From Mizuhopecten yessoensis (lineage: Eukaryota), in NCBI RefSeq assembly GCF_002113885.1, contig NW_018406276.1:128572-192571 (forward strand): DNA of 64,000 bases, given 5' to 3'. This document shows positions 25,453 to 63,010 of this stretch, piece after piece. The notes under the pieces were generated by a model. The model searched no databases, was not told where the DNA came from, and saw only the letters and a program-made list of their open reading frames with translations. A program made the position numbers and the translations under genes. The number at the start of each line of letters is the position of its first letter. Position 1 is the first letter of the stretch.

Positions 25453-28400
25453 TTTATCTATGACATTAGGTCAGGATTGGTGTGCTGAGGTCTTGGTACA
25501 CATTTGTACATCTTCTACATCGGTACAATAGATCTTCATTTATGATACTTTAGTTGCCTTTTCTTTATCTATGACATTAGGTCAGGATTGGTGTGCTGAG
25601 GTCTTGGTACAAATTTGTACATCTTCTACATCAGTACAATAGACCTCCATTTATGATTTTTTCAATTGTTTTTTCTTTATCTATGACATTAGGTCAGGAT
25701 TGGTGTGCTGAGGTCTTGGTACAAATTTGTACATCTTCTACTTCTGTAGCCAATCTGACATCAGACCTAAATGATTTTGTTGTCAGGTCAATGAAACCTT
25801 TCTGTAAGCTTACATTGTAATGTGTCCTTGGTCAAAGTATATAGAGACTCGTTCAAGGTCTTACAAACAGTTCCAGGTGGCAAGGACATTATTCTGATCT
25901 CTGTATCCAAATCTTGTTGGCAAATGTTATGACATGTTAAAATAAAGTAGAGATATATATTTATGCCAATAAGTACAACATGACAAAAGTATAGGTATCA
26001 GTATGATGTATATTCGTTGGGTATATAGATGATATATTCATGTGATACATCAGATACAGCATAACATACAAATGACATTTGGCTTGAAAACTATCTCAGC
26101 TGTTCCCCTTATACAAATTTTTGAATCATTTACCTGATCAGTGTGCGACAGTGTAAGTAGACCACCAGTAAAGATGATTCAGCCGCTGCATGGCCCTCGC
26201 TCAGCTGGAGGGGGACTGATATACTGCCGTAATGCATGTTACAAGAACTCTTCGAGAACACTACGTGACCCTCTCACAAATCCGGAAATCCACCCAGCAG
26301 TGAATTCCATCACAGTACATGAGACAGTACCATGCAAATGTTTTGCAAGAACTTGTGAGATTCTTTATTATGTAAACTTGAGATCTGAATATCTCATGAA
26401 TCGAATGATGAATTGATATATGAAATTATTTGAACTTGGGGAAAGATGTATACGTTGTAAATGCTGACAATGATTGACTCGTATTGGTCGAGTTCTTCCC
26501 TGCGTGCCGGGTAGGTCATGCACATTGCATGTTTAAAACATCCGAATGCTGTGATGAACTCCCCTATAGACAGGGACCGACACAGTCTGTTATCGTTATT
26601 TTGGGACTGGTACGAGGCGGAAGTTTGTTCCTGCACCTCGTAGTAGGGAATTAGAAGGGAGGCTAGATTAGTGTCCTTACCTTCAACAATCTGTCGGCGT
26701 AATGACAGCGCCATCAAATCCATTTGAGGAATGTCCTCCGGGGCAACTGGGCCTGTCACGTTGTGTGATTCAAGGCTCGCACTTACCTGAGCTGTGACAC
26801 TTACATTTTGGCGGTTATAACTGTCCTCGAGCGTGAAGGGCTTTGGGACTTTCTCTTTGTCCCCTAGAAGTCGTACGAGGACATTCTACATACCCGACAT
26901 CGTTTCACACAAAGTTTTTAGCATGGGCGACGCCATGTTGTTTGGTACAGTAGACCTCCATTTATGATGCTTTAATCGCCTTTTCTTTATCTATGACATC
27001 GGGTCAGGATTGGTGTGCTGAGGTCTTAATGGTACAAATTTGTACATCTTCTACATCAGTACAATAGACCTCCATTTATGATGCTTTAATTGCCTTTTTC
27101 TTTATCTATGACATGAGGTCAGGATTTAGGACATTATTCTGATGTCTGTATCCAAATCTTGTTGGCAAATATTATCAAATGTTCAAAAAAACCTATAAAT
27201 ATATAAATAAATAGTTTAACAATTACTGTGTTCAGCATTATGGTTGTGACAACTAGTGTAAGACAGACGAATGACATCATTTCAAAACTGTGCATTCTAC
27301 ATCAGTACAATAGACCTCCATTCATGATGCTTTTACAAATGTATTGCCTTTTCTTTTTCTGTGACATTGGGTCAGGAATGGGGTGCTGAGGTCTTGGTAC
27401 AAATTTTTACATCTTTTACATCAGTACAATAGACCTCCATTTATGATGATTTAATTGCCTTTTCTTTATCTATGACATTGGGTCAGGATTGGTGTGCTGT
27501 GGTCTTGGTACAAATTTGTACATCTTCTACATCAGTACAATAGACCTCCATTTATGATGTTTTTAATTGCCTTTTCTTTATCTATCACATTAGGTCAGGA
27601 TTGGTGTGCTGAGGTCTTGGTACAAATTTGTACATCTTCTACATCGGTACAATAGACCTCCATTTATGATGCTTTTATTGCCTTTTCTTTATCTATGACA
27701 TTAGATCAGGATTGCTGTGCTGAGGTCTTGGTACAAATTTGTACATCTTCTACATCAGTACAATAGACCTCCATTTATGATGCTTTTATTGCCTTTTCTT
27801 TATCTATGACATTAGGTCAGGATTGGTGTGCTGAGGTCTTGGTACAAATTTGTACATCTTCTACATCAGTACAATAGACCTCCATTTATGATGCTTTTAT
27901 TGCCTTTTCTTTATCTATGACATTAGGTCAGGATTGGTGTGCTGAGGTCTTGGTACAAATTTGTACATCTTCTACATCAGTACAATAGACCTCCATTTAT
28001 GATGCTTTTATTGCCTTTTCTTTATCTATGACATTAGGTCAGGATTGGTGTGCTGAGGTCTTGGTACAAATTTGTACATCTTCTACATCAGTACAATAGA
28101 CCTCCATTTATGATGCTTTTATTGCCTTTTCTTTATCTATGACATTAGGTCAGGATTGGTGTGCTGAGGTCTTGGTACAAATTTGTACATCTTCTACATC
28201 AGTACAATAGACCTCCATTTATGATGCTTTTATTGCCTTTTCTTTATCTATGACATTAGGTCAGGATTGGTGTGCTGAGGTCTTGGTACAAATTTGTACA
28301 TCTTCTACATCAGTACAATAGACCTCCATTTATGATGCTTTTATTGCCTTTTCTTTATCTATGACATTAGGTCAGGATTGGTGTGCTGAGGTCTTGGTAC

Positions 28401-30897: not shown

Positions 30898-30901
30898 TTT
30901 G

Positions 30902-32600
30902 CGTTGGCGTTTGCAAATCATCCTCACGATTCGTAGTAACCTGGATGCCATCTTGTCGCACGGAATTGTGGGATCGCGCACCTCTAGACCTCGCGTCTCT
31001 CAGTTTTTTTTAACCAAAACCGTTCGTTTCTCGTTGGCCCTGAACGGTACCGCCAAAATTGTCAATTCCTCTCGCAAACGAGCTAAAGTCCAATTATCCA
31101 GCATTTCCGGATCGTATGGAACAACTTTGGGATTCCTACGTTTAGGTCCCATGTCTTAAAACTATTGTCTCACAATATAAAGTTGATAGGCCTAGAAAGG
31201 TAGGCACGGTCGAGTGCACGTACAATGTCAAGTTCACACATAAAATGACGAATCACGGCGAAGTATTTCGCTCGCTACACTTATATAGGAAGTGCGTCAC
31301 GTCCTTAAACACAAAGTTGTAAGGTAGTAAAAATAGGTACAACAGTATACGATTAGTAGGCTGCTTTACTCCTCGTGTGTAACAACTATGGTCACTCTGG
31401 CCGGTAAAGTAGGGAATCAGCAGAGCGGCCAAGTTTATATCCCTTCCTGAAATTATTTGCTGTCGCAATGAAGGGGAAACTGTTTCGACTTACGGTAGTG
31501 TTTCTGCTGAAAAGCCATATCGCGTTCTTTGAATAAAGCTCTCACCTTGTGATGCGTTAGTCTCAAGACTCCTGTATGCGGTCTCCAAGGTGTACTCTGC
31601 TTGAACAAGTATGCTCGATTCCGTGGCAAGTTGATTTTCGCTGCCGGCAGCCGCTGCAGGAGAAAATCGACGCCTGGAAGAATTTGTCACGGAACTCACT
31701 GTAGTGGCGTTGCTACTAACGGAATCATTAAATCGTCTTTCAAGTCTGACATAACTGTCTTGAAGTGTAGAAACACTCTCCGCCAAACTAGTGACGATGG
31801 CGACCAACGTTGGCATTTGCAAATCATCCTCACAATTCGTAGTAACCTGGACGCCATCTTGTCGCACGGAATTGTGGGATCACGCACCTCTAGACCTCGC
31901 GTCTCTCAATTTTTTTAACCAAAACCGTTCGTTTCTCGTTGGCCCTGAACGGTACCGCCAAAATTGTCAATTCCTCTCGCAAACGAGCTAAAGTCCAATT
32001 TTGCAGCATTTCCGGATCGTACGGAACAACTCTGGGATTCCTACGTTTAGGTCCCATGTCTTAAAACTATTGTCTCACAATATAAAGTCGATAGGCCTAG
32101 AAAGGTAGGCACGGTCGAGTGCACGTACAATGTCAAGTTCACACATAAAATGACGAATCACGGCGAAGTATTTCGCTCGCTACACTTATATAGGAAGTGC
32201 GTCACGTCCTTAAACACAAAGTTGTAAGGTAGTAGAATACGTACAACAGTATACAATTAGTATGCTGCTTTACTCCTCGTGTGTAACGTAGCCACACCTT
32301 AAGTCCAACAATCACGCAGAAAGTAAACAAACGTTTCTCCTCGTAATAATCCACGTTACAACGTAACAAACCGACGAATTTTAAATCCTACGGCGATGAC
32401 TGTCACTAGTAATCATGGTGTAGTTCAAGTTAAATCCAATAGTGTAGTTAACACTTGAAAAGTCGAGGAAAAACAAACGATGAGAATCCGCCAAAAACAA
32501 AGAATGAATAGGGTGCTGTCAATACTGGTACCCCTCTAGGGGATAATGCTGATTGGTCAAAATCTACCCCACTCATTAGCATAAATATATCAACAACTTG
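30902..32600 (-). mobile_element. DIRS/Ngaro-type gag fragment 2 (5' UTR and N-half), with a duplicated 5' part
   Basis: ATG at 32057: MGPKRRNPRVVPYDPEMLQNWTLARLREEL (LEM/HeH-like N-terminus), then 'YGFSAETLP*VETVSPSLRQQIISGRDINLAALLIP'. 30902-31383 is a diverged copy of 31808-32287. Confidence 0.8.
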
Positions 32601-33752
32601 CATAGAGATGCGTATGACTAGCTACGATATCAAGATGACACGACACAGGAAATAGACCTGACAAAGCACATATTCTTGTAATAAACAACACAAAGAAAAG
32701 ATATAAAATGTACATGAACATTTAGTGCATTTTTTTTTTTTTAACCTAACGAATTCATGACTAAACAAACCATACACTAAACAAGTCATACATGTAGAAG
32801 TACATATAGTTGTATACAAACTATAATTTTAACATTTAACATGTCAAATTATCATCTAAAGATGTTCCGAGTATGAATCAGGCACCTTTGAGGTTCCCGA
32901 AGGGGTAAACTGTCGTATTATAAATTGCTATTGACTGATTTAGATATGTTATGTCTGACCAATGACTACCGTTAATATTTGCGTAGTGCGCACTTTTTTA
33001 AGAGGAAAATGAAGTGTCAAGAAAGGGGTGTACACGATACTCAAGAACAATACAAAACCAGTCCTTGGTCACGACCATTTCTGGTAAATTTTTCGAGGAT
33101 TTTCGGAAATGTTTTGATGTATGCTAACAGCAATACAACTGCTAAATTTGGTTGAATAATCCCTGATTTCATTGCCAATTTAACAATTACGAAAAGTTGC
33201 AAGTTTAAGTCATATAATACTATAGAATCGGATAAATAAACTCGAGTAAAGTAGGCTCAACTTTTCAGGACGTTACGTTGTGAATTGATAAATACCACGT
33301 ATCAGGAAACATAGCGAAGAATTGCATCGGATTTATTACTCTGTGGTTAAAATGTCGTTCAATCCCGAAGCCTTCCGATACACGTTGTTACAACAAACAA
33401 CAAAAAAGGTAAACTACTTGCTTGATTTGAATAATCAAAACAGTTCCATAAACTGCACATTATGCTTAGTGTAATTATTTCTCTATTATTGTATAAAAGA
33501 ATGAAGCTACATAGAAATAGTATGTTAAATTTGTTAAACAATAACAAATCAAATCTACGCTATATCGGCTGAGGTTCAGCTTATCATTTTAATGGTCCCA
33601 GTGGGGGTATCCCACTACTGACCCTTTAGCCCTTCAGCCAGAGGGAGCTGATCACACAGCATGACCCCCTATACAGCTCAGCTAGTACTGATTAGCCTAC
33701 ACTTGTGCAGCTAAAACTAATTATTACTTCTCAGATAAATTGAGATGATATG

Positions 33753-35333
33753 TCACAATATTTCTCTGTCAGTCATAGTACCTTTCTCCAACTCCTGTAG
33801 CTTCTGGATGGCGTCATCTTTGCGTACATAGAACAGAGAACATGATTCCTTGTCTATGAGATAATTTACACTTGGGTGTAATTCATCTTCATGTGGGGCG
33901 GACAGATCTACTATAAGACGTGGTTTCCCAGAGTATTTTCCCACACCTACGCCTATGGGGCTTAAACGGTATTTATCGAAAGTAAACGTTCGAATGGACC
34001 CTGTAAAACTCCCTTCTCCACTTCGCTTTGAATTAATTTATCCACCAAATCCGACTGTGTTATCGCAGACTGAAGATTTTTACACTCCTTTGTTGGTAGC
34101 TCGGTTTTTGATATAAGAGTGTCAAAACCTTTGGACAATCCTTAACACAGGTAATCTATAAACATTTTGTCTGGGTGGAGATCAAGTTCTGTACGGAGTT
34201 GGTCTATATTTACAGGTGTGTTAACGTGTACGTAATTGTCCTCTATCAGTCATTGGTTCTGTTGTGTGTTGTTTTGGACTCCTGTCCCCGATTTATTGGG
34301 TTGCGATCCATTGTTGCCGCCTTTGCACGAATCTGCCCCATGGCTAGTAGATTTACAAGACGTGCAGGCATGATAGAAGAAACAACCATCGCCTCGTGAA
34401 CATTTCCCCGAATTGAAGTTGGTACACAATTCTCTTTTTGTTGTTAAACATTGTTACACATTTCACTTTTTGTCTGTCGAATATATCGGTATCCCTGCCT
34501 TGATAACCCTGTTGGTTTGTAATTTGTGCGCCTCCATTTCCATAATGTAAGTCTTTTTGTACCTTTTTTCGGGGCAGAAAGCAGTGTTGTGTGACGTCAA
34601 ATTGCACAATTGACAAGAGTTCACCCTAGTGTTTCCCATGATCATGGCCAGTAAACCATTATCCTTTAGGACCCAGTCCACCTTGCCTATATTATCATTT
34701 AATGCCGCTGCTGCCCTAGCCGAAAACTGGCAGTGGTAATCGTAGAATTTCCCCCCGTAAACATTAGAAATTTCTACGATATTGACTTCATATCTATCCA
34801 GTTCAATCCTCCCATGGGGGGCTTTCTTGTACACCGTTCTTTTGTACTTCCCGAAAACGTTTATAAACTTGCTGATAGTCAATGATTTTGCAAGTCTGGG
34901 GTCTTCTGTTTCATTTAATGTAATGTTTATAGCCGAGCCGTCCCTATCGTAAACCTCCCTGGGTTTGTGTCTCGGCATTAGAAATTGCGCCAGATTGACG
35001 TCTTGTCCTTCCCAAATAAGTTTCTCTGGGATACTGTCTATGTGGGGGATTGATTCTGAGGGAATACCGAACTCTGATATGGGCAGTCTGTACCCACCTG
35101 TTGCAGACGTAGCTCGGGTATACTCCTTCTCGTCTGGCTCTGTCTCAGGGTTGACTGCAGTGTTTGTAGTTGTCGGTGATACTGTGGGGACATTTCTTGT
35201 CTTCATAATCCCTAGCACAGCAGTCTGCAGTCCCGCGACTGTCTGCTGCATGGATTTCATTGCCTCCATCATGTGTTTGACAGCTTCTGTGTTTTGATCC
35301 ATGGGCGCAGCCATATTTGTTGGTGACGTCACG
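33753..35333 (-). mobile_element. DIRS/Ngaro-type element 3: gag (289-aa ORF) plus 5' part of RT
   Basis: gag core, FYDYHCQFSARAA and Cys/His knuckles, followed by degraded RT 'TPVN..HPD..GFDT..GKYSGKPRLIVDLSAPH'. Confidence 0.85.
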
Positions 35334-35336
35334 NAT

Positions 35337-36187: not shown

Positions 36188-38354
36188 TTAGAACAGCAGT
36201 ACAATAAAGCCAACCTCGAACAGATGCCACTGTGATGGATGAATGGGCAGTAATTTGAAAGCGTCCGAAATATCTATTTTACACATTGAATTATTCTTTC
36301 CTAATGTTTGTATCAATTTGATAGCATCGTCTATGCGCACATAACACAGGGAACAATCCTCCTTATCTATTAGGTCTTTGACACTCGGGTGTTCGTCATT
36401 GTCGTATGGTGAAGATAGGTCCACTATCAAAAGGGGTTTACCAGAGTACTTCCCAGATGACACCCCTATTGGACTGACTCTATATGTTGAGAATGGTAAT
36501 ATATTAAAGGGTCCTTGTAAAAATCCTTTTTTAGTCTCACTTAGAATAAGATTGTCGACAGTGTTTTTGTCGTTAAAAGCCGACATTAGGTTTCTACATT
36601 CTTTAATGGGAAGAGTAGATCCTACCACCATAGTATCAAATCCATGAGTCAGTCCATCGCATAAATAGTTCAAAAACTCACGGTCCGGATGACCGGTCAG
36701 TTCATAGCTCAGTCGTTCAATATTGACCGGAGTTGTTGCCACTTGTCATTGACAGGGGTTAATGTTACTGTCCTCACTTTGGGTTACCCTTTGTCGTCTG
36801 TCCCTCAGAGCAGTAGCTGCTTTTAACGCAAATTGACAATGGTAATCATAAAACCTCTGGCCGTATACGTTGGCAATCTCAGTGATGTTTGCTTCGTAAC
36901 TGTCCATCTCGGATCGATGCATCGGGAATTTTTCGCACATGACCCTTTTAAATTTCCCAAAAGCCGTCACAAATTCCGAAATGGTCAAATGTTTATTCAA
37001 CCTGGGGTCCTCAACTTGATCATTAATGTGGACATTAATGCCAGGCTGTTTATCTTCAGTCTCGTATTTAGGAATTAACAGGGAGGCCAGATTGATGTAT
37101 CTCCCCTCGAGGATTTTCTTTTTGTTATTGTCAGACACAATGTCCAAGTGAGGGATGCTCTCGGACGAGATGCCATCAGATAAAGAATCAAAGTAGTTAC
37201 CTGATTTTCCTGTAGAGCTCGTGGCAGCCGCAGCGTGTGTGTTGGTCACCGCGTATGATTTCTCCGTGTGTACGTCTGTGGGTTGACGTTCCTTATTGCT
37301 GTTGGAGACGAGAGCGATAACAGTCTGCGGCAGGTCCATCATTGTTTTTTGCATACCCTACATTGACAAAAGGAGTCCCTCCACAACATTCACACTAGGT
37401 GTGGCCATGTTTTTTGACGTCCGCATACCCACTTCCGGTGTGGTGATGGGTGATGCGGTTGACAGAGCCTCGGCACATCGAAGTAGTTCCGTACAATTTT
37501 CGGATGTACTAGCACTTGTCGTGGTGTTGACGTCCGACACGGGCATAGGTGTTAAGCCACTATTGTCATTGTCTGAACTAATCACTTCCTGGTTCGAATT
37601 CACTAGTCCCCGAACTGGGCAGCCTCGTACAACCCCACTTTCACGCCGCCTTCCCACATTTTCAAGATACATAGTTTTAAGCGTGGCTTTTGTAATTCCT
37701 GTTGATTGTATTCCTGTATGATTGTCCAGTTGTTTGGGTTGGAATTATCCCACGGGACGGTTCTGGCAATCTGATTAAAATCATCTGTTACATGGCTCCG
37801 CCTGAACATCTGAATGTGTCGTGGTTAGGGTCACGTTCAAGTGACCTTTAGATTAACCAATCAGAGGCGCGCTGGCAAAAGTTTGCCAGCAAATCGGAAT
37901 ATCATGGTTGATGGATAAATAGCGAGGGTATCGAACAGATTAGTTTTCAAAAACAAATATGGCGGCGGGAACTGACGTTTCTACGACGCCAAGGAAAACG
38001 CACCCATTGGGTAAAAATTGCTTAGGCAACACCGCCATACAGTCTTTCTTCTCTAATAAAGCTTCGAATATCTGTTCGGGTTTCAGACGATCAATCTCAA
38101 ATAACTTCAGAACTTTCGCATCATTCTCATCAATGTCCACCATATTTGTTACAACTCCGTGCGCCCTTTTGAAAGAGGATCTCTGATTGGTAAAAATTTA
38201 ACGAGTATTTATAGATATAAAGGTCACCTGAACGTGACCCTGACCGCGGCACACTCAGATGTTCAGGCGTAGTACGAAGTTAACGAAGCCATGTAACATA
38301 TGATTTTAATCAGATTGCGGTTCTGGTTGTGGTTCTCGACCTACGGCTCGCCAT
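36188..38354 (-). mobile_element. DIRS/Ngaro-type element 5: gag plus N-terminal RT, interrupted by an AcademH-type insert
   Basis: After removing 37767-38326, ATG at 38354 reads MASRRSRTTTRTVPWDNSNPNNWT. gag core at 36746-37354. RT at 36188-36742 ('YRVSPIGV..GKYSGK..VDLS..CKIDISDAFKLLPIHPSQWHLF') stops before YxDD. Confidence 0.88.
37767..38317. mobile_element. Non-autonomous AcademH-like DNA transposon (551 bp)
   Basis: ~85-100-bp TIRs starting CAATCTGATTAAAATCAT. 9-bp TSD CGGTTCTGG at 37758-66 and 38318-26. Internal RecQ-like start 'LKPEQIFEALLEKKDCMAVLP' on minus. Confidence 0.75.
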
Positions 38355-41320: not shown

Positions 41321-41755
41321 TAGCTCACTTGGTCTGAAGGACCAAGGTGAGCTTATGCCATACCGTTGCGTCCGTCGTCTGTCTGTCCGTACGCAACAAT
41401 TTCTTTAAACAACTTCTTCTTAGCCACTGATTGGAATTCAACTAAATTTGACTGGAAGCATCCCTAGGTTGTGGGGATTCAAAATTGTACAATTGATGGG
41501 GCTGACCCCCCAGGGGGCTGAGGGGCGGGGCCAAAAGGGGTCAATTTGGCTGTATTGCTTTAAGCGACTTCTCTTCTGGAACTAAAAAGTGGATATCAAC
41601 CATATTTGACTGGGAGCATCCCTAGGTGGTGGGGATTCAAAATTGTACGAATGATAGGGCTGACCCCCCAGGGGGCTGAGGGGCGGGGCAAAAAGGGGGT
41701 AAATTGGCTATACTGCTTTAAGCGTCTTCTTCTCTGGAACTAAGAGATGGATATC
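41319..41755 (+). mobile_element. HINE/Helentron-type non-autonomous element, 5' part
   Basis: TTTAGCTCACTTGG..CCAAGGTGAGCT 5' inverted repeat, a (GTCY)n tract and two ~160-bp core repeats. Confidence 0.65.
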
Positions 41756-41756
41756 G

Positions 41757-43072: not shown

Positions 43073-45047
43073 TCAATCCCGAAGCCTTCCGATACACGTT
43101 GTTACAACAAACAACAAAAAAGGTAAACTACTTGCTTGATTTGAATAATCAAAACAGTTCCATAAACTGCACATTATGCTTAGTGTAATTATTTCTCTAT
43201 TATTGTATAAAAGAATGAAGCTACATAGAAATAGTATGTTAAATTTGTTAAACAATAACAAATCAAATCTACGCTATATCGGCTGAGGTTCAGCTTATCA
43301 TTTTAATGGTCCCAGTGGGGGTATCCCACTACTGACCCTTTAGCCCTTCAGCCAGAGGGAGCTGATCACACAGCATGACCCCCTATACAGCTCAGCTAGT
43401 ACTGATTAGCCTACACTTGTGCAGCTAAAACTAATTATTACTTCTCAGATAAATTGAGATGATATGTCACAATATTTCTCTGTCAGTCATAGTACCTTTC
43501 TCCAACTCCTGTAGCTTCTGGATGGCGTCATCTTTGCGTACATAGAACAGAGAACATGATTCCTTGTCTATGAGATAATTTACACTTGGGTGTAATTCAT
43601 CTTCATGTGGGGCGGACAGATCTACTATAAGACGTGGTTTCCCAGAGTATTTTCCCACACCTACGCCTATGGGGCTTAAACGGTATTTATCGAAAGTAAA
43701 CGTTCGAATGGACCCTGTAAAACTCCCTTCTCCACTTCGCTTTGAATTAATTTATCCACCAAATCCGACTGTGTTATCGCAGACTGAAGATTTTTACACT
43801 CCTTTGTTGGTAGCTCGGTTTTTGATATAAGAGTGTCAAAACCTTTGGACAATCCTTAACACAGGTAATCTATAAACATTTTGTCTGGGTGGAGATCAAG
43901 TTCTGTACGGAGTTGGTCTATATTTACAGGTGTGTTAACGTGTACGTAATTGTCCTCTATCAGTCATTGGTTCTGTTGTGTGTTGTTTTGGACTCCTGTC
44001 CCCGATTTATTGGGTTGCGATCCATTGTTGCCGCCTTTGCACGAATCTGCCCCATGGCTAGTAGATTTACAAGACGTGCAGGCATGATAGAAGAAACAAC
44101 CATCGCCTCGTGAACATTTCCCCGAATTGAAGTTGGTACACAATTCTCTTTTTGTTGTTAAACATTGTTACACATTTCACTTTTTGTCTGTCGAATATAT
44201 CGGTATCCCTGCCTTGATAACCCTGTTGGTTTGTAATTTGTGCGCCTCCATTTCCATAATGTAAGTCTTTTTGTACCTTTTTTCGGGGCAGAAAGCAGTG
44301 TTGTGTGACGTCAAATTGCACAATTGACAAGAGTTCACCCTAGTGTTTCCCATGATCATGGCCAGTAAACCATTATCCTTTAGGACCCAGTCCACCTTGC
44401 CTATATTATCATTTAATGCCGCTGCTGCCCTAGCCGAAAACTGGCAGTGGTAATCGTAGAATTTCCCCCCGTAAACATTAGAAATTTCTACGATATTGAC
44501 TTCATATCTATCCAGTTCAATCCTCCCATGGGGGGCTTTCTTGTACACCGTTCTTTTGTACTTCCCGAAAACGTTTATAAACTTGCTGATAGTCAATGAT
44601 TTTGCAAGTCTGGGGTCTTCTGTTTCATTTAATGTAATGTTTATAGCCGAGCCGTCCCTATCGTAAACCTCCCTGGGTTTGTGTCTCGGCATTAGAAATT
44701 GCGCCAGATTGACGTCTTGTCCTTCCCAAATAAGTTTCTCTGGGATACTGTCTATGTGGGGGATTGATTCTGAGGGAATACCGAACTCTGATATGGGCAG
44801 TCTGTACCCACCTGTTGCAGACGTAGCTCGGGTATACTCCTTCTCGTCTGGCTCTGTCTCAGGGTTGACTGCAGTGTTTGTAGTTGTCGGTGATACTGTG
44901 GGGACATTTCTTGTCTTCATAATCCCTAGCACAGCAGTCTGCAGTCCCGCGACTGTCTGCTGCATGGATTTCATTGCCTCCATCATGTGTTTGACAGCTT
45001 CTGTGTTTTGATCCATGGGCGCAGCCATATTTGTTGGTGACGTCACG
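43073..45047 (-). repeat. Exact duplicate of 33359-35333 (element 3 gag-RT plus flank)
   Basis: Identical ORF set shifted by 9714 bp; the first copy ends at the N at 35334. Confidence 0.92.
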
Positions 45048-45124
45048 TGCTTAAACAGTTCAAGAACTGTTCAGGAACTGTTCTTGAACGTTAAACGAGA
45101 CAAACTGTTCTTGAACTTCTTGTT

Positions 45125-49981: not shown

Positions 49982-52900
49982 ATGTCGGAGTCTGAAAGTT
50001 TAGGAACCAAAGAAGATAATTTTCGAATCGATGTGGATGGAAAATTCAAGTGTTTGATCTGTGAGAACAAACTATCTTCCAAGCAACGAGTGTTAGTTCA
50101 CCTGCACTCGATACATGGATTGAGTAAGTGTATTTTCTAAACGTTCTGACTTCCGTCTTTCAATTTCATCTCTGCCAGTTTGGTTTGCGCCGAAACATTA
50201 CAGTACAGTAGAGAGTAACGTAATGACGTTGCGCATTTCGGCCGTTTTTTTAATAGTCTCAAAGAAGAAAATGAATATTTCTTCAATTCCTATTACGACA
50301 AAGAGAGTCTTACAAGAATTGTAAAAAAAAAATTGAGCCATCACAGCAAACTTAACGGCGATTTTTCGTCGATCAAAACTTAAGTTGGCAGACAGTAGGA
50401 AAACTGTGATATTTTTTAATGCGGAGTTAATTCGGCCTTGATGGATCTGATGGATCTGCATCTGTGACATGTTTCTGCTAGGAATAAGGGGAACTGTCCA
50501 ATCACATTTGCAGTCCTTGCTTTTAAAAGTGCGAACATACTTGATGTTATTTGTGTAAACATGAATACATTTAATTTTTGAATTTTTTTTCATGGATGCA
50601 TATGTGTCGAATAGAGAGGCTAGAAATTAAATAACTTTTTATTGCTATACATGTACATAATATATGAATAGATGGTTTGCATGTGAGCAGGCATTTCTTA
50701 AAATTGATATACAGGTACAAGATTAGATTATGCTTAAAAGTTGCCAATGAAAAATGTTGATGCATTCATGTTTACAAATATCAGCAAGTTTGCCCTTCAC
50801 TTCAAACTCAGTGTTGCTGTCTGACCGTGGAATTTCTTTAATGTCAATAAATTTTGTCGAATTTACAACCGGTAGCATCATTCCTTTCCCATCACTAGGA
50901 CTACACTTTGAAATTCTACTGAAACCGTGGAACATCTTGTGTTTTGTCAAATGTTCATGTGACGCGGGAAATGGATGTTGGATCTAAATTTCGACACTAG
51001 AGAGAGATACGGAATTTCTTGGATCGATCGGATGACTGTAAACTCACATATTTTATTTTTTGGCCTAAGCTTTATTAAACACATGATGCACTGATTTCAA
51101 TCAATGACCCTTCCTCGATCATGTCGAGGTGACAGCAGAAACCTTTAATAACTAGTATGATCCACATGATTTTGTGAAATTTTAGATGCCCACTTATTTT
51201 GATAGTTTCCTTCGGGCTAGGAACAAGTTTTGCATTTATTTGTATGGTATATACTTTGTATTTCAGCACCTGTGAAAAGAGTGAAGAAAAAATATGTGGA
51301 TGATGAGTCTGCTGTGGTTCCAAGATCAACATTTTACAGATGAAAAAAGCAAAAAGTTCATGACAGCAGTGCTAAAAGAAATCTTTATAATCTTGAAGGC
51401 AAGTTTCTTTTAGTTTCTTAGGAGTAATGTCAAACAGTCGAGAAATTACAATTCAACAATTATTTGATTTTTAGGTCACCTGAGCTTTAGCTCAAGTGAC
51501 CTATTGCTATCCGTTTTCGTCCGTCGTCGTCCGTCGTCCGTTAACATTTTACATTTCAAACTTAAAGTCAAGTTCTGCTGGGCCGATTGAACTGAAANNN
51601 NNNNNNNNNNNNNNNNNNNNNNNNNNNNNNNNNNNNNNNNNNNNNNCCACGGCCGCCATTTTGAAAACCTATTTCAAACTTAAAGTCAAGTTCTGCTGGA
51701 CCGATTGAACTTAAAGTTTGTAGGAATGATCGACTCATGGTCCTGACAAAGTGTTGTTATTTTTCAGGTCAATCATAAATCCAATATGGCCGCCACGGCC
51801 ACCATTTTGAAAACATATTTCAAACTTAAAGTCAAGTTCTGCTAGGCCGATTGAACTGAAACTTTGTAGGAATGATTGACTCATGGTCCTGACAAAGTGT
51901 TGTTATTTTTCAGGTCGATCAGAAATCCAATATGGCCACCACAGCTGCCATTTTGGTAAACTATTTCAAACTTAAAGTAAAGATCTACTTGGCCGATTGA
52001 ACTGAAACTTTGTAGGAATGATCGAATCATGGTCCTGACAAAGTGTTGTTATTTTTCGGGTCAATCAGAAATACAATTTGGCTGCCATGGCCGCTATTTT
52101 GCTACTAAGTTCTAATAGGCCGATCTCACTTAAAATTGGTCTAGGAATGATCAGCTCATGGTCCTGACAAAGTTAAGTTAACATTATACTATTTTTTACT
52201 CAAATTGGTACATATTTCAACAACAAAAATAAATACTATAGACTCAGGTGACCGTTAAGGCCCATGGGCCTCTTGTTCTGATACACCTTGCAAGTTGTTT
52301 GTTAGCAATGATTTATGATACCGTAATGAACTATTCAATCAGTTTGCGTATGAAATAGATTCATGATATATTTTGAATTGAAAGTTCAGACTGCTCTGTG
52401 AAGAATTAAAAAAAACCTTTTCCATAATTTAATACAAGGAACATTTTTTTTATAATACAAGTATTTCTGAAAATGTTAATTTGTTAAATCTTATACTATT
52501 TTCTCTTTTCAGGAGATTTCATTAATGACCAGCCGTCAACATCTCAAGAAAATCTCAGTCATAGTCAATCATATGGATGCTCTGATGAGGAATCATTTGA
52601 ATCTGGCCATACACCATCACCTGATGAACAACTTCCAATTTGTGTTGAACAGAATGATACACCTACAGTTACTCTTGAGACTAGTACACTTCTAATGACC
52701 CCTGAAAAGCAAAATACTTACAATCTTTCATCATCATTACCAAACATTGACTCAGACTCAACAAGTGCTTTTTCACCTGATGTAGACTCAGTTTCTGAAT
52801 TTTCATTTTCAACAGATAGTGAATCAGTAGTTCTTGGGTTTTCTGATAATGATACCAGTTCTTCATGTCTTGATGACCATTCATCAAGCTTTTCTTCATC

Positions 52901-55757: not shown

Positions 55758-57109
55758 ACAATCAGACTGGTAGACTGGTAGTTTTATATATATTGAAATC
55801 CTAATGTAAGCAAACATAATTTGATATATATACTGAAGTTTGTTTTTAGTTAAACTAATGTTACAATGTATTATTAGTGAAAGACATATACAGTTTTAAT
55901 TTCTAATTGTTCAAGATAATTTTTTTTTTTAATTTTTGGAAAGTGATTAATAGAATTTGAAGATGTGATTAATTAATGAACAGGCCTTTCTCATAGACAT
56001 TTTTAGTTACCTGGAACAAAAGAAAAACTACAATCAGTATTAAATAATTATATGTAACAGAAAAAAATGACATTTTGAATTGTTACTACAATTTCATTGT
56101 TATAAATATTGTTATATATACATGTATACCACATAAATCAAATTTATCACCAATAAAAGGTATATATATATATGTATTAGAACTTCATTAAGTGCTTTAG
56201 TTAAATCACAAAACTATTCAAGAACTCGATAGTTCTTTAATTGTTCTTAATATAATCTTTAAGCATTCTAATCAAGAACATTTAAAGAACACATCTTCGT
56301 AAAACATTCTTAAATCTAGTCAAGAACACAATAAGAACATTTTAAGAACACTTTTGTTCTTGAGCTGTTCTTAAATTTAGTCAAGAACACATAAGGAACA
56401 TTTTAAGAACACTTTTGTTCTTGAACTGTTCTTGAAAATGTTCATGAACTTTTCAAGAACAGTTTAAGAACTTCAGCAGTTCTTAACCTGTTCTTGAATA
56501 GTTCAAGAACAGTTTCAAGAACTGAAGTTCAAGAACACGGTAGATTTTTTAGTTAAGAACAGTTCAAAAACAGTTCTTGATGTTCTTGAACTGTTCAAGA
56601 ACTGTTCTTAAAATCAAGAACTTGGTTTCGCAGGGGAAGCCATTGTCCACAAGTTTACCAAGTTTACAAAGTTTATGTATAGTTTTACACTCTAAGACTC
56701 CTCTCCTGAGGCTTGGAAACACACGAAACGTAGCTAAATATATCCTTTAGTCTTTCTAGTTTCAGATGGTGTTAGATAGTCCAAGTAAATTATTATAAAT
56801 TATGGTAACTTAGAGGAATAAAAAATAGCCATTACGATAAATGACTCACTGGTTACTGATGCTGCGATGCTAGGGTACTGGTCAAGCAGTCTTTGTATAG
56901 ACTGACAAATCGGTAGCTGGTCCTTTGTGTTGACTGACCAATCAACTTCCTCGAGTCAGGCCCATATTCTGGATATGTACAACTGACCAGGCCTTCCGCG
57001 GGATGTACGAATGGGTTACTTGTCTGTTACAGCATGTTACAATATTGACGGCATTACCTCATCTGCATCAAGACAAAAGTCCATGGAACTCAAGGAAACT
57101 NTTTTTTTG

Positions 57110-58180
57110 TCGACATAAACCTGGTTTATATACATAAACCTTAAATTTTCTATCTGGGTGGTTGCTTAATTCTTGTCTTAAATTGTTCACATTGACAGGT
57201 GTTGAGGCTTGCTTATCAAAGTCGTCACAAGATAGTCACTTTTTGTTTTTTGGACAAGACACTGCCGGGTGTGCCCCATTTAGACAGTTTTTACATGCAT
57301 GTCCGTAAATACATGACGCCCAAAAAACCCTGCCATTATTGTAGTTGTTGCACAGTTCTATTCCCTCGATTACCACTCTTGACCTTCCGTGTTTATCATC
57401 ACCCCCTTTTTGTAGTGACGGCTGTGAATAACTGTTGTCTACTCTACTATTGTTTTGCACGGCCTGCTGATTGCCTCTGTAAAACGGTTTGTCATACTGC
57501 CGATTACTTGTTGGTGCATATTTATTTTGGTATGGCTGTGTGCTGAGTAGGGCAGGGCAGAAATCTGCAGTGTGAGAACCCGCCCCGCATGAGCAGGTGT
57601 ACATTTTAGCTCCTGCCATGAGCATGGGCAGTAGGTTGTTGTCCTTTAACGACCAGTTCACCTTTGAGCTCAATTGGTGCAAAGCAAAGGCACTTCTCGC
57701 AGACGGTTTGGGTGTCTCAAACACATAATCCTCCTAAACTTCCCAAAAGCGGTGATAACCTCACTGATTGTGAGTGTTTTGTTTAATCGTGGGTCAACAC
57801 GGGCCTTGATGTTAAGTTTTCCCCCCTCTGTATAAACTATTCGGTTTCTAGCCACCTCGTAATTGGGGATCAATAGGGCGGCCAAATTCACATCTCTTCC
57901 CTCGAGTATCTGTCTTTTTAAAGGCTCCGACACGAGATCAAGTCGGGGCAAACTGTCGGACGAAATGCCATTACATGACGAAGACAAGTTTGTGTACGCA
58001 CCTGTTGCTGTGTGAACTTGGTTACTGGCCGTCGGTTGATATCGTGACAGTTCCGCCATGGCTGCTTCCAACTTGTTTGTTTCTGTGGGAGTGGTAGCAG
58101 ATTGTAAGCTACGCTCGATCTCGCACTGCAGCAACAAATTTATTGTCGTCTGCAACTAATCCACCACGTTGGTTTGTTGA
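57110..58180 (-). mobile_element. DIRS/Ngaro-type element 6: gag plus the first codons of RT
   Basis: 'GISSDSLPRLDLVS..ILEGRDVNLAALLIP..DPRL', C-terminal 'LCNNYN..C.YGHACKNC..HPAVSC', then 'TPVNVNNLRQELSNHPD'. Confidence 0.85.
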
Positions 58181-60331
58181 TGTCTGTAAATATGTAAATA
58201 AAAGCATGTGGACTCTTCCACTGTCTTTATCCATATCTGGTTGCAAATAAAAAAATAAATAATATAAGAATAAATAGCATTAACTGTGTTTTCTTGGCAC
58301 ATAGTTACCTTAATACCTTAATCTTTTAATGCTTTGATTTTAGTAACATCTTTGTAAATTAAATGCTCTTCAGGTTTGGAGTTTTTTTTTGAGTCCCCAC
58401 AACCTTGTCGATGGCCGTCTTTTGTGTTATTTACTTTCTACATGTTTCGGCCTGCTCTGCAGCAATCATCAGGATATATTTACAATTTCACGTGTTATTG
58501 ACTCAATAACCTTTGTTGAGATTATTATCACTTGATAATGATAGTCGTTCTCGTGCGCGTAGTGAAACATACACTGTGTACATATGTGTATGTCAACAAC
58601 CTGTGGGTTTCCATTACTATTTTTGGAAGTAAACCAGGGATACCAGATTTTTACAACTCATTAGTGTATTCATGCAAAAGATACATGGTTGAAAGGACTA
58701 TGTATGGTTTGGGCATGTTTTGGCCTCCAAATGCATCAAAATTCAAAACCTTTAAATGAACTGTCAAACGACTGTTTCTTTAATTTTGAATACTCCCCAA
58801 ATACTATCATGAAAATATTTATTTGTATTTCTAAATATTGTTGTCTGTAAATATGGTAACAAGTTCAAATGTGCATAAATTAGAAGAAGAAAAAATGTTC
58901 GGTGAATATTCGTCTTATTTTGAATAGTTTCTCTCCAGGAAACTATAGAGCGCATGCTTGAACAAACTTGATATCAAAGGATAATGTGTAGACACCTGTT
59001 ATACATCTTTAATAATGATAATAATATACAACATTTGATATAGGGCCCTATCTAGCTAACATAACACTGGCTAATATCTCCCTATAATGTTCGATATACG
59101 GCAATTTTGCTGTATTAATAGTTCAGTCGTCGGGCAGCTGCAAGGCAGAAAGTTTATGGTGCAATTTTTCTGCCTCACACTGTCTACTGTCGCAGTAAAG
59201 AAAATTTTGGGTGATAGCTAAGGTTTATTACTGTATTATTATTGGTATGTAATATTGCATGTTTTGGAACAGAAATCATTATAACCAAATATTGAAAGCA
59301 AGAGACTGAATGATATAATTCAACAAATGTTTTTGTTTGGATGATAGTCCAATGCTCATTTTAAAGTCGTAATGTTAATAGGTATAGTCGCTCTAGGGTT
59401 ATCACACAAGAAGTTCATTTTTGTTTGTTTTGGGTCTTGGTTAGGTCTAAAGGGCACGCAGATTTAGAGTGATTTCCTTTATATAATTAACACACATGCG
59501 TGTAGCTGCATGAAGGCAAATTGCATCCAAATTGGCTGTTGAAATTGTTGCAAAGTTCAAGACCTTCATGGTAAACAAGTGGACGACTATGACCATCTAC
59601 TGAAGAGAAACTAGAACTCCTAATTGTTCCAATCTTGGAATTTTCGGAAACTCCACTGGGGGCCCCTTGACGCTTAGGGCCAAACACAGAAGTGGGACAA
59701 AAACCTGTTACATGTAAAGGGCTGTCAAACAAGTTACACGTGAGAGGCTGTTGGTTAGTAAAAATATTGCAAAAGAGATCATTGTCTCTAATAGACCAGT
59801 CTATCGGTGTGTTGGTATAGCGGAGTTGTGCTGCCGCCCTGGCTGAAAACTGTCGATGATATTCATAGAACCCTACAGCATATCTAGTGCCCATGTCCAC
59901 GATGTCTCTCTTGTAGAGATCGAGCTCAACACGTCTAGCCGGGTAAACCGAGCACATAACTTGTTTATATATACCAAAAGCCAAAATGAATTCATTCAAA
60001 GTTAAATTCCTGGAAAGTCTTGTGTCAGGCTTGCTTAACGTATGGCCATTTGGGTCACTGTTATTAACGAAGTAGGGTATTAACAATGCTGCGAGGTTTA
60101 TGTCCCTACCAGTAATAATTTGCTGATGTAGAGCGATCGATATCATTTCAACTAAAGAATCTCGAAGTATAGAGCCAACGCCGTACTTCTGGTTTATGTT
60201 TGGTAGGTTCCGAAATCCCGGCTTGGATACCAATTAGTATGCAGGGCGATTGAGAATGTGGGTAAATATAAATCGTAAGAAATCAATCGCAACAAGCCAT
60301 AGGGTAGGTGGTTCTTGGGTTTATTTGGAAG

Positions 60332-60370: not shown

Positions 60371-60457
60371 AATTTTTTCACAAGATTTTTACCCCTAAAG
60401 TACTAAAAATGTGGGCCCATGTTCTATTATTGATGACGTCTATACAATAGTGACGTN

Positions 60458-61126
60458 TCTTTCTGGATCAAGTGGGGGCCTTGCTTTCCCAGGGGAGTGG
60501 AATGGTTTTTTTCCAGTCCTAGAACAGGACACACAAGGTCCTGTCTTGAAAAAACTGTGAGAGTAATTCTCCTCATACACTCGTTGATTTCTTTTTCCGA
60601 GTTCCCAATATGACCCACAGATTTCAGTAAGTTGTCCACTGTCAATGTGGAGGACGAAGCTGTTGAGGATGTGGAGGTCAGTGTAGTGCTGGAGGAACTA
60701 TCCTCTGTAGTAGCAGGATTACTGTTTTGACATGTTCCAGAAAGTTCAGAAAATTTCCTCTTCAAAGACTTAAGGGAGGACCTTAAGTCTTTCACCTCCC
60801 TTTCCAGATGGTCAACCCTCTTCTCCAGCCTTCGACTGCCACTGAAAAATATGAAAATTAAAAAACATACAAAATATAAGATTTAAAACCAAATACCTAT
60901 GCGGGTAAATTAATCATACAGTTAATAAGCCTTAAAAATATTGGGCCTCTAGTCTAAGTTCTGCAGATCACTGATAACATTTTATTAAATAAATAATTTA
61001 TGGTTTAACAGATATTATATATATAAAATAAACTTTCCTTGAGGATGCTAGAAAGTTTGTTATCAAGTTTTATTTGTTTATTTATATGTTTGACAAGTAA
61101 TAATATTTACCTAGGACGCAAATTGG
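60458..61126 (-). repeat. Second partial copy of the BEN-gene last exon and intron
   Basis: Near-identical to about 46087-46744 with small indels; starts at the N at 60457. Confidence 0.88.
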
Positions 61127-62149
61127 ATTATACGATTTATATTTCAACTAAAGTTAATGTTTCTGAAGCGTAACCAAATCTGGTCCTCTTACACGTCTCA
61201 CCTTGTGGTTGCGTTAATTCGTCCTCGAAACATCTGTATGCCGTATTTAAAGTGAACTCCTGTTGTGGTGGAGATGAAGTTGGGGGCACATGTGTCACTG
61301 ATGTGGCCATCTGTCTTTCGCTACCGGCGGCTGGTGCCACTGGAAGCCTGGATTGGGAGTCTTTTTTTTCTTATTCTCTGATGCAACCTGTTTTGCCTAT
61401 TAAACATAAAACGGAAGACAACAGAGGATTAGAGGGGTTCTTTCTCGTTTTCATCTTTGGTCCTATCGGTTACCCGAGTAAAAATATATATACCTTATAA
61501 ATTAGGGGTGCCACGATAAACCGGTATACCAGTACACAGTCACCAAATATTTTATTCCTAGTGTTTATTGTTCAATGCTTTCATTGTTTTGTTGTCTTAT
61601 TTTTGAAAATTTAAATAAAACATTGTTCCAAATCTGGTCCTCTTACACCTCTCACCTTGTGGTTGCGTGGATTCGTCCTCGAAACGTCTGTATCCAACGT
61701 GTACTCCTGTTGTGGTGGAGACGAAGTTGGGGGCACCTGTGTCACTGATGTGGCTATCTGTCTCTCGCTACTGGCGGCTGCTGCTGCCACTGGAAGCCTG
61801 GATTGGGAGTCTATTCTATTCTCCAGTCGCTGATAGCACTCCTGTAATGTAGCTACACTTTCTGATAAGCTCGTAACCAAGTTCACCAAATGGTTATTAC
61901 TACTCGACGACTCGGATTTATGTTGAGATGCAGTGTTTACAGACTCACGTGAAACATCCGGTCCTCCATCTTGCCGCGATGCATTGTGGTATACCGCACC
62001 TCTCCTGTGTGGTCTGACGGGGGTAGAAGTTCTCGCTTCCCGTAACTTCTTGACTAAACACATATGATAAGATCCAGGCCTGAGAGAATGCAGTTATTCC
62101 AGGACCCTAGTAATAGTCCAATTCTCTAGTAATTATTGATATTTTGCAT

Positions 62150-63010
62150 AGTTTTGAACATTCTTTTTCTCCCTTTGCTGATGACAGAACGGGGTTGAAT
62201 GGGAGGTCAATCCACACAAATGGCAGGTGTTCACTTTGGAGTTTCCTACCACCATACTGAGAAGGCCGTTGTCCTTCATGTCCTAGTGGACCTTCTGATT
62301 ACTATCTCTCAAGGCAGTTTCAGCCTTCATGGTGAATGTTTGATATTTCTATAATGTTAGCTTTATAAACAAGTTCTGCCCGTCGTTCTGGAAATTTGTC
62401 GCACATAACCCTTTTGAATTTCCCGAATGCGGTTATGAACTCAGGGATAGTCAGTGACTTGTTCAGACGGGGTCTTCGGACTCATATAGGTGTATGTTTA
62501 TACCCTTATGGCGATCATCCGGGCGGTCGGTCTCGAATTTGGGGATAAGAAGGGAGGCAAAATATACGTACTCCCCCTCCAGAGTTTTCTTCTTGTGAGC
62601 ATTGGATACAATGTCAATGTGGGGAATACTGTCGGAGTTTATGCCCTCACCTGTAGTCTCTGTAGTGTTGTTACCGGTCTGCTCCTGAACTTGTCTCATC
62701 AAAGCGTATGCCGTCGTCAATGTATATTCCTGAGCATTACTCTCAGGCGCATCGCAAGCTCCAATCAGTTTGATGACAGTCTGTTGGAGGCCCTACATAG
62801 TCTGTTGCATATCATGCATGGACGACAACATGCCTTCGATGATCATGTTGTTACCGGCGCTGGAGGCCACCATATGGATCCCGTCCAACTCTCGTCTCTC
62901 ACGTTAGCTCCCGGATTAACACGCAGCTGTTGGCGCCTCACTACCTTGCGGTCTAGCCAATGCCGTCGCGTCACGAAGTAGTTCCGTGTAATTGTCCTGT
63001 GCAGGCGCAC
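62150..63010 (-). mobile_element. DIRS/Ngaro-type gag fragment 8
   Basis: 'GINSDSIPHIDIVSNAHKKKTLEGEYVYFASLLIPKFE..EDP'; related to element 5 but diverged. Confidence 0.8.

What the first reader, a model, noticed from the sequence alone, without database searches (positions are those of the whole stretch)
26450..63010. Retained retroelement pieces are gag-only: RT is always cut before its catalytic core, and no RNase H or tyrosine recombinase is visible
Seen: nearly every piece covers the same gag window ('..lP.vd.vs..lr.qI.eG.dvNLa.LLiP..D.RL...Lt..EF..AFG'). Three elements continue into pol (33.75, 36.19 and 57.11 kb) and all stop before YxDD. I found no RH or YR motifs. Random decay should sample the longer pol/YR region more often. 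Inference: either selection keeps antisense gag as the effective silencing target, or capture favours 5' pieces, or some gags (the 289-aa ORF) are kept as proteins, like Fv1-type dominant-negative capsids.
Basis: partly seen in the sequence, partly recalled or inferred. Interest (0 to 1): 0.72.

Follow-up and report, generated by a model that had tools for sequence, protein, structure and literature searches.

The report
Cluster of broken retroelement front halves
A 36-kb stretch of Yesso scallop DNA holds about eight dead fragments of tyrosine-recombinase retroelements that all point the same way and keep only their front (gag) end; the pattern is real here, but the pieces are pseudogenes, several edges are assembly joins, and nothing shows they are kept for a function.

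Summary
Profiles built from natural full-length relatives (gag 443, RT-RNase H 533 and recombinase 329 positions) find gag pieces at eight places between 26.4 and 62.9 kb, all on the minus strand. Polymerase similarity never passes profile position 177, and the catalytic motif sits near 223. No RNase H or recombinase remnant exists anywhere in the 64 kb. A held-out control shows that fragments of 40 residues or more would have been detected.

Four caveats apply:
- The 33.7-kb and 43.5-kb pieces are identical over 1975 bp, so they count as one event.
- The "cut" at 57.1 kb lies 24 nt from a single N that marks a join at a repeat edge.
- The catalytic motif in this family reads LLDD, not YxDD.
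- The 289-aa ORF is a remnant cut short by stop codons, and it starts at an N or tandem-repeat boundary.

The pieces share only 30-43% amino-acid identity, so they come from separate lineages. All carry stops or frameshifts.

Random placement gives P of about 1e-5 to 2e-3, so the front-end bias is real in this window. Its cause is open. I read it as a co-oriented repeat graveyard of Ngaro-like elements. A piRNA-type trap or a mobile defective derivative remains possible. Retention as protein is not supported. The window comes from Mizuhopecten yessoensis.

The parts
26448..26944 (-). E1: gag fragment (profile 113/125-297). It forms the 5' part of a 1196-bp island (25749-26944) inserted in one unit of the 111-bp satellite.
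   Evidence: satellite phase 88|86 at the two junctions
30902..32287 (-). E2: gag N-terminal half (profile 9-236, 31385-32045) with a 5' leader. A second copy of the first 482 bp follows (30902-31383 = 31808-32287, 96.7%) and abuts the satellite.
33359..35333 (-). E3: gag profile 110-441 (34295-35329; contains the 289-aa ORF 34463-35332), RT profile 2-150 (33774-34222, two frameshifts), then a 424-nt tail with no match. Its upper end is N 35334.
36206..37767 (-). E4: gag profile 12-323 (no zinc-finger part), one in-frame stop, then RT profile 2-177 (ORF 36188-36742). It includes motif A but ends before motif C.
43073..45047 (-). E5: copy of E3, identical over 1975 bp (second 289-aa ORF 44177-45046). 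Its upper end abuts the 81-bp tandem repeat.
57125..58170 (-). E6: gag profile 129-436 (two or three breaks) plus RT profile 2-28. Similarity stops 24 nt before N 57101.
59305..60155 (-). E7: gag profile 201-442 (248-aa ORF 59487-60233) plus a weak RT start (profile 3-29, 59305-59385, with stops). N 60457 lies 300 nt upstream.
62151..62873 (-). E8: gag profile 115-369 in four or five frame pieces. No polymerase.
61116..61979 (-). E9: two weak, mutually similar bits (61174-61365 ~ 61628-61815, 87.7%) that resemble gag profile ~81-210. Uncertain.
   Evidence: E 0.16-0.3
35334..35334 (.). Single N. The E3/E5 identity stops exactly here. I read it as a scaffold join at a repeat edge. Not filled.
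57101..57101 (.). Single N. The 44 nt below it belong to the 102-bp repeat family (86% to 41827-42176, inverted). A join at a repeat edge.
60457..60457 (.). Single N. The 670-bp repeat 60458-61127 (97.8% to 46086-46744) starts at the next base. A join at a repeat edge.
51598..51646 (.). 49-N gap inside a 146-bp tandem array. The flanks are out of register, and no retroelement piece lies near it.

Best explanation
Positions 26.4-62.9 kb are a repeat-dense stretch of the Yesso scallop genome, holding satellites, local duplications and DNA-transposon remnants. At least seven already diverged lineages of Ngaro-like retroelements have each left one dead fragment there. In full-length relatives these elements encode ORF1 'gag', RT-RNase H and a tyrosine recombinase.

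Shown:
- Every fragment is on the minus strand and covers the middle of ORF1.
- Four fragments run 28-177 residues into the polymerase and stop before the catalytic LLDD motif.
- No RNase H or recombinase remnant exists in the 64 kb.
- Each fragment is a pseudogene.

Inferred: this is an accumulation site where such elements landed beside earlier relatives in one orientation, as DIRS-1 does in Dictyostelium centromeres. Their 3' parts were then lost to truncation, deletion and tandem-array turnover. What persists is DNA, not a protein, and no selection for gag is needed. Why the lost part is always the 3' part is not explained by this account. The clustered breakpoints suggest a more specific step that one window cannot reveal.
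For: Family and element layout:
- Relatives of the gag ORF are 440-490 aa.
- Relatives of the RT start are ~530-aa RT-RNase H proteins with no room for a methyltransferase.
- Recombinase relatives are 300-350 aa.
- Gag and recombinase relatives share identical longest-contig lengths (4425, 4562, 23565, 22464, 4135). I infer from this that they sit on the same contigs.

Fragment map and absence of 3' parts. Sensitivity control.

Separate lineages: the pieces are 30-43% identical to one another, but 45-60% to database proteins.

Pseudogene state: 2-5 frame pieces per fragment, and two in-frame stops in the best ORF.

Repeat-rich setting:
- 111-bp satellite of 29 copies, plus 81-, 102-, 146- and 158-bp arrays.
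- piggyBac, Tnp2-type, BEN and Gypsy-gag remnants.
- E1 is cleanly inserted in a satellite unit.
- E2 is partly duplicated in tandem.

The same assembly carries annotated recombinase genes of this family elsewhere, so the missing 3' parts are not a general assembly blind spot. DIRS-1 clusters are described in PMC7192593 and PMC3950715.
Against: - Plain deletion predicts no preference for losing 3' parts. The random-placement P is 1e-5 to 2e-3.
- Breakpoints cluster. Three separate 5' ends lie within ~30 nt of one internal ATG, and two RT ends lie at profile 28-29.
- No leftover 3' halves flank the cluster, which argues against simple nesting.
- The two-sided P for 7 of 7 on one strand is only 0.016.
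- The element class is reported as low-copy in bivalves, and this genome as transposon-poor (PMC10294476). Eight pieces in 36 kb is therefore a strong local excess that a passive graveyard does not by itself predict.
Confidence: 0.45

Rival explanations
1. One-strand small-RNA (piRNA-type) source locus, or another orientation-selected trap such as a long plus-strand transcript. Fragments persist because they lie antisense to a plus-strand precursor, and gag sequence is what the silencing uses.
For: - All Ngaro-like pieces lie on the minus strand, as do the piggyBac, Gypsy-gag and BEN remnants. Only the Tnp2-type gene is on the plus strand: 10 of 11, P=0.012.
- Many diverged lineages of one low-copy class are concentrated in 36 kb.
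- piRNAs and clusters exist in molluscs, this scallop included (PMC6128900, PMC11067994).
Against: - No small-RNA or expression data were available here.
- Only 7 clusters totalling 49 kb are reported in this species. They are enriched for Penelope, Harbinger, Gypsy, Helitron, L1 and SINE, not DIRS/Ngaro (PMC11067994).
- Known clusters elsewhere are not gag-only.
- Selection for antisense does not by itself remove pol or recombinase sequence.
Confidence: 0.2
2. The pieces arrived already short. They would be copies of defective gag-plus-RT-stub derivatives moved in trans, or partial cDNA or DNA fragments captured at breaks, so the 5' bias reflects the donor molecules.
For: - The 1975-bp unit occurs twice with identical ends and different flanks.
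- The E1 island is a clean 1196-bp insertion with a 3-nt overlap in a satellite unit.
- 5' ends cluster just upstream of one internal ATG, and RT ends coincide at profile 28-29.
- DIRS-1 makes abundant incomplete linear cDNA and can be moved in trans (PMC7192593).
Against: - No terminal or split direct repeats link the 5' flanks to the 3' tails.
- The tails share nothing with one another.
- Incomplete minus-strand cDNA should keep 3' ends, not 5' ends.
- The twin unit may be an assembly duplicate, since one end is an N.
- The E1 tail shares a segment with the satellite's own spacer, so the island may have moved by recombination between arrays.
Confidence: 0.2
3. Mainly an assembly artefact. 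In this short-read scaffold, contigs end where conserved high-copy pol and recombinase sequence begins, so only the faster-evolving gag ends were assembled and joined.
For: - All three single Ns sit exactly at repeat edges.
- The E6 RT stub ends 24 nt before an N.
- E3 and E5 have zero substitutions over 1975 bp.
- N-run lengths vary (1, 49, 223), which is typical of estimated scaffold gaps.
Against: - The RT breaks of E3/E5, E4 and E7, and the gag-internal ends of E1, E2 and E8, lie inside contiguous sequence with hundreds of bases of non-repeat sequence after them.
- The same assembly carries recombinase genes of this family elsewhere.
Confidence: 0.1
4. Some gag ORFs (the 289-aa one) are kept as proteins that interfere with incoming elements, in the manner of Fv1.
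For: A 289-aa ORF occurs twice, and the other pieces keep 160-250-aa ORFs.
Against: - The ORF starts with GTG at an N or tandem-repeat boundary and lacks the N-terminal ~145 residues of relatives.
- Two in-frame stops cut off a zinc-finger region that is still recognisable.
- The polymerase part behind it has frameshifts.
- No identical protein is in the 5.8-billion-sequence collection.
- The structure model is moderate (pLDDT 62.5) and has no capsid or other fold match at E<1.
Confidence: 0.03

Closest known systems
Ngaro-like tyrosine-recombinase retrotransposons (order DIRS)
   Same: Full-length relatives have ORF1 'gag' (with a CCCH/CCHC finger), an RT-RNase H of ~530 aa without a methyltransferase domain, and a ~330-aa tyrosine recombinase. 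These sit on ~4.4-4.6-kb units. That matches the three-ORF Ngaro layout in PMC9210276.
   Different: The window's copies are fragments with no recombinase, no RNase H and no detectable split direct repeats. Motif C reads LLDD rather than YxDD in most relatives. Placement on a tree with named Ngaro references was not done.
DIRS-1 clusters in Dictyostelium centromeres
   Same: Many fragmentary copies of recombinase-type retroelements packed together in repeat-rich DNA (PMC7192593, PMC3950715).
   Different: Here the pieces come from several lineages that share only 30-43% identity, all in one orientation, and only the 5' half survives. No centromere evidence exists for this locus.
One-strand piRNA clusters (flamenco type)
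   Same: Co-oriented dead fragments of several transposon families in one interval.
   Different: No small-RNA evidence is available. Known clusters are not limited to gag sequence. Reported scallop clusters are 2.7-17 kb and enriched for other classes (PMC11067994).
Fv1 and other gag-derived restriction genes
   Same: Gag-derived sequence retained without the rest of the element.
   Different: Those are single intact, conserved, expressed genes. Here all copies are interrupted and the longest ORF is a truncated remnant.

Membership tests
Ngaro-like YR retrotransposon | Three coding parts in full-length members: gag-like ORF1, RT-RNase H, tyrosine recombinase | tested here: met
   This holds for the relatives, not for the window's pieces. 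Gag relatives. RVT_1 plus RNase H-like RVT_3. Phage_integrase and SAM-like domains. Fused models P0075 and P0070.
Ngaro-like YR retrotransposon | No methyltransferase domain in the polymerase ORF (separates Ngaro from DIRS1/PAT) | tested here: met
   Polymerase relatives are ~520-540 aa from RT start to end. Pfam finds only RVT_1 and RVT_3.
Ngaro-like YR retrotransposon | Split direct repeats (A1 ... B1 A2 B2) at the ends | tested here: inconclusive
   No repeats were found between the 5' flanks and 3' tails of any piece. The pieces are truncated, so absence is expected.
Ngaro-like YR retrotransposon | RT and recombinase group with named Ngaro references on a tree | not tested
Ngaro-like YR retrotransposon | The copies in the window carry a recombinase and a catalytic RT | tested here: not met
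   with the control. They are fragments of such elements, not elements.
One-strand piRNA cluster | Co-oriented fragments of several transposon families | tested here: met
   7 of 7 Ngaro-like pieces and 10 of 11 transposon remnants lie on the minus strand.
One-strand piRNA cluster | Dense strand-specific 24-32-nt small RNAs with a 5' U | not testable with these tools
   No read data were available here. Public libraries exist (PMC11067994).
Domesticated gag gene (Fv1-like) | Intact ORF with its own start and a maintained stop | tested here: not met
   The ORF starts with GTG at an N or repeat boundary. It has two in-frame stops, after which homology continues.
Domesticated gag gene (Fv1-like) | Capsid-like fold | tested here: inconclusive
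   AlphaFold2 model pLDDT 62.5, with a helical core at ~80. No PDB match at E<1.
Domesticated gag gene (Fv1-like) | Orthologues under purifying selection; expression | not testable with these tools
   No access to other scallop genomes or to RNA data.

The most novel reading that the evidence does not exclude
The interval is a dedicated one-strand trap, a small-RNA source locus, for Ngaro-like elements in a bivalve. Alternatively, it is populated by a so-far undescribed class of mobile gag-plus-RT-stub derivatives with fixed ends near an internal ATG. Under either reading, the front-half-only pattern is produced by a specific mechanism rather than by decay.
Probability: 0.15. Interest if true: 0.6.

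Novelty: new member of a known kind. Interest (0 to 1): 0.3.

Why it matters
Surveys of tyrosine-recombinase retroelements count copies by their RT, RNase H, methyltransferase or recombinase domains (PMC3783388, PMC4157794). Gag-only remnants therefore go uncounted, and no baseline for their frequency exists. If the front-half bias held genome-wide, it would say something about how these poorly understood elements replicate or are disabled. If it were local and tied to small RNAs, it would give a first example of what a bivalve silencing locus keeps. As it stands, this is one window of a short-read assembly with about seven independent pieces, so it is best treated as an ordinary repeat graveyard with an unexplained skew.

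Tried and rejected
- Pfam on the gag and RT-stub ORFs found no families, so family-specific profiles were built from natural relatives instead.
- A marginal hit of one fused relative's SAM-like region at 33362-33559 and its twin (E 0.16-0.84) vanished with the 74-sequence recombinase profile. I treat it as chance.
- Terminal or split repeats around each piece: none found.
- Shared sequence among the tails after the breaks: none found.
- Poly(A) tails at the 3' ends: only an A7 run beside N 57101 and an AATAAA after the E4 break. This is not a pattern.
- Intron idea (E3 and E4 lose similarity at AG|GT): no downstream RT continuation exists anywhere in the window. I treat it as chance.
- Nesting idea: no displaced 3' halves were found.
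- tRNA and Rfam scans for SINE-like inserts: nothing.
- Pfam on 40 further stop-free pieces of 75 aa or more gave only a Gypsy-type gag, C2H2 fingers and low-complexity hits.
- Fold search of the gag model: no match.
DNA of full-length relatives and of other copies could not be fetched, and no dN/dS could be computed.
The Tnp2-type gene was searched by its single 572-aa ORF only.
Full report
**Origin and setting.** The 572-aa ORF at 54039-55757 (+) is 100% identical over its full length to LOC110451260 of Mizuhopecten yessoensis, which sits on a 210-kb scaffold. The window is therefore Yesso scallop. It contains N runs of 223, 49, 1, 1 and 1 letters, the pattern of a scaffolded short-read assembly. 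No N was filled or looked up. The interval is repeat-dense. It holds a 111-bp satellite of 29 copies at 27342-30600, with partial copies at 25447-25748, 26945-27126 and 30768-30897. It also holds arrays of 81, 102, 146 and 158 bp. Other remnants are a piggyBac-type transposase (39179-40466, -), a Tnp2-type gene (52695-55757, +), a BEN-domain ORF (45957-46412, -) and a Gypsy-type gag (41039-41404, -).

**The gap flagged by the scan's program.** The 49 N at 51598-51646 lie inside a 146-bp tandem array. The left flank (51553-51593) matches unit positions 25-65, and the right flank starts at unit position 1. The two sides belong to the same array but are out of register for 49 nt. No retroelement piece or ORF of note touches the gap. 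It has no bearing on the finding.

**What the pieces are.** Pfam recognised neither the gag-like ORFs nor the RT-stub ORF.
- A word search with the 289-aa ORF found 28 relatives. The full-length ones are 440-490 aa, from Mytilus, Mizuhopecten and unnamed assemblies.
- The representative search with the 184-aa RT-stub ORF found 4330 relatives. These include ~530-aa polymerases with RVT_1 and an RNase H-like RVT_3 domain, and fused gag-pol or pol-recombinase models.
- A search with the recombinase part of one relative gave 412 proteins, typically 300-350 aa, some with Phage_integrase hits.
- Gag and recombinase relatives share identical longest-contig lengths (4425, 4562, 23565, 22464, 4135). 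I take this to mean they lie on the same contigs.

The layout is gag, RT-RNase H without a methyltransferase, and recombinase on ~4.4-4.6 kb. This is the Ngaro layout described in PMC9210276. Terminal repeats and tree placement were not tested.

**Checking the observation.** I built profiles from natural relatives only: gag 443, polymerase 533 and recombinase 329 positions. I searched all six frames of the whole window two ways: as stop-to-stop pieces, and read through with X at each stop.
- Gag pieces occur at eight places, all on the minus strand.
- Polymerase similarity reaches position 177 (36206-36736), 150 (33774-34222 and its twin), 28 (57125-57205) and, weakly, 29 (59305-59385).
- Motif A lies near position 153-162 and motif C near 223.
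- Nothing beyond 177 and no recombinase appears at any useful E-value.
- Leaving out the most distant relatives and spiking in their fragments, 94 of 95 fragments of 40 aa, and all longer ones, were recovered at E<=0.01. The absence is therefore not a sensitivity problem.
- Motif C reads LLDD in 12 of 18 references and has Y in only 2. A literal YxDD scan would have missed even an intact copy. The profile result makes this moot.

**Independence and assembly.**
- The pieces at 33359-35333 and 43073-45047 are identical over 1975 bp, so they are one event or one contig used twice. Their identity stops exactly at N 35334.
- N 60457 is followed at once by a 670-bp repeat, 97.8% identical to 46086-46744.
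- The 44 nt below N 57101 belong to the 102-bp repeat family. The RT stub of the 57-kb piece ends 24 nt above that N, after an A7 run.
- All three single Ns thus mark joins at repeat edges, and the 57.1-kb "cut" cannot be interpreted.
- Clean polymerase truncations inside contiguous sequence number two (E3=E5 and E4), plus one weak (E7).
- The same assembly carries annotated recombinase genes of this family elsewhere, so the absence here is not a general assembly blind spot.

**Are they proteins?** No.
- The 289-aa ORF starts with GTG at the N, or at the 81-bp tandem repeat in its twin. It aligns to residues ~146 onward of full-length relatives. It ends at two in-frame stops (codons 290 and 293), after which the zinc-finger region continues in the same frame.
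- Behind it, the RT part is split over three frames.
- Every other piece needs two to five frame segments.
- No identical protein is on record.
- An AlphaFold2 model (pLDDT 62.5; helical core near 80) matched no solved structure at E<1. "Gag" is therefore a positional label here, and a capsid fold is not shown.

**Is the skew more than chance?**
- The pieces share only 30-43% amino-acid identity. Each except E8 has a closer relative among database proteins (45-60%) than among its neighbours. They are separate lineages, not diverged local duplicates.
- I placed seven fragments of the observed lengths at random on a 1305-position element. P is 1.4e-5 that all stay within gag to RT 177. It is 3.7e-5 without the N-adjacent piece, and 2e-3 without that piece and the longest one.
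- Seven of seven on one strand gives a two-sided P of 0.016. Ten of eleven transposon remnants gives 0.012.
- The skew is real for this window. The test is post hoc, and the number of events is small.

**Mechanism.** I found no terminal repeats, no shared tails, no displaced 3' halves, no poly(A) pattern and no downstream RT continuation that would indicate introns. Several features are not random:
- Three separate 5' ends lie 9, 19 and 36 nt upstream of the same conserved internal ATG.
- Two RT stubs end at profile 28-29.
- The 26-kb piece is part of a 1196-bp island inserted cleanly in one satellite unit with a 3-nt overlap. Its tail shares a segment with the satellite's own spacer.
- Three gag pieces have a tandem array directly on their 5' side.

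My best reading (0.45) is an accumulation site for these elements, co-oriented as recombinase elements tend to cluster (DIRS-1: PMC7192593, PMC3950715), with later loss of 3' parts and no function. The rivals are a one-strand small-RNA source (0.2), short defective or captured donor molecules (0.2), mainly an assembly artefact (0.1), and retained protein (0.03).

**Context from papers.**
- DIRS and Ngaro types are low-copy in bivalves, and this scallop is transposon-poor (PMC10294476). That makes eight pieces in 36 kb a marked local excess.
- Seven piRNA clusters totalling 49 kb are reported in this species, enriched for other classes (PMC11067994).
- Surveys of recombinase retroelements count only copies with enzyme domains (PMC3783388, PMC4157794), so no baseline for gag-only remnants exists.

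**Limits.**
I could not fetch DNA of full-length relatives or other copies, compute dN/dS, or sample the rest of the genome.
Coverage was measured against profiles of natural proteins.

Noticed in passing
window 54039-55757 (+), with 52695-53378: An intact 572-aa Tnp2-type (Transposase_21 + DUF1258) ORF. It is 100% identical to M. yessoensis LOC110451260 (888 aa), which identifies the window's organism. It is the only transposon remnant on the plus strand.
   Followed up: partly
window 27342-30600; also 25447-25748, 26945-27126, 30768-30897: A 111-bp satellite of 29 copies at 98% identity. It is interrupted twice by the same ~173-bp spacer (27127-27300, 30601-30773). A 77-nt piece of that spacer also lies in the tail of the E1 island (25883-25959).
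   Followed up: partly
window 25749-26944: The island carrying gag piece E1 is a clean 1196-bp insertion in one satellite unit. The left side ends at unit phase 88 and the right side resumes at phase 86, a 3-nt overlap.
   Followed up: partly
window 41039-41404 (-): A Gypsy-type Retrotrans_gag piece (E 1.7e-9) with no protease, RT or integrase found next to it. It is also on the minus strand and has tandem arrays (41438-42208) on its 5' side. So a second superfamily also shows a gag-only remnant.
   Followed up: partly
window 39179-40466 (-): A piggyBac-type transposase remnant (DDE_Tnp_1_7, E 4e-65) in two overlapping ORFs.
   Followed up: no
window 45957-46412 (-) and 60458-61127: A BEN-domain ORF. 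A 670-bp stretch including part of it recurs at 97.8% identity immediately after N 60457. In both places it lies upstream (on the minus strand) of a gag piece.
   Followed up: partly
window 35323-35334 and 60450-60457: Two of the three single Ns are each preceded on the plus strand by GTGACGT. In E3/E5 this is part of the palindrome TGACGTCA inside gag. Cause unknown.
   Followed up: no
window 45123-45630 and 56217-56612: An 81-bp tandem repeat with internal palindromes and a related 61-bp array. One abuts the 5' end of E5. The other lies ~0.5 kb beyond the 3' end of E6.
   Followed up: no
window 8049-8165 (-): A weak match (E ~0.1-0.2) to polymerase profile 109-147, again upstream of the catalytic core and on the minus strand. 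It lies outside the finding's range, and no gag was detected beside it.
   Followed up: partly
window 18365-18742 (+) and 19548-20039 (+): Two ORFs with several C2H2 zinc fingers (E 1e-17 to 1e-20). This is probably a host zinc-finger gene on the plus strand, 6 kb from the cluster.
   Followed up: no
window 36746-36748: In E4, gag and RT are in the same frame and separated by a single stop. This gag lacks the whole zinc-finger part (profile 324-443). A Mytilus edulis gene model (P0027) aligns without a gap across the same junction.
   Followed up: partly
relatives P0029 and others: RT motif C in this family reads h-L-L-D-D-F in 12 of 18 references. Tyrosine is present in only 2.
   Followed up: yes
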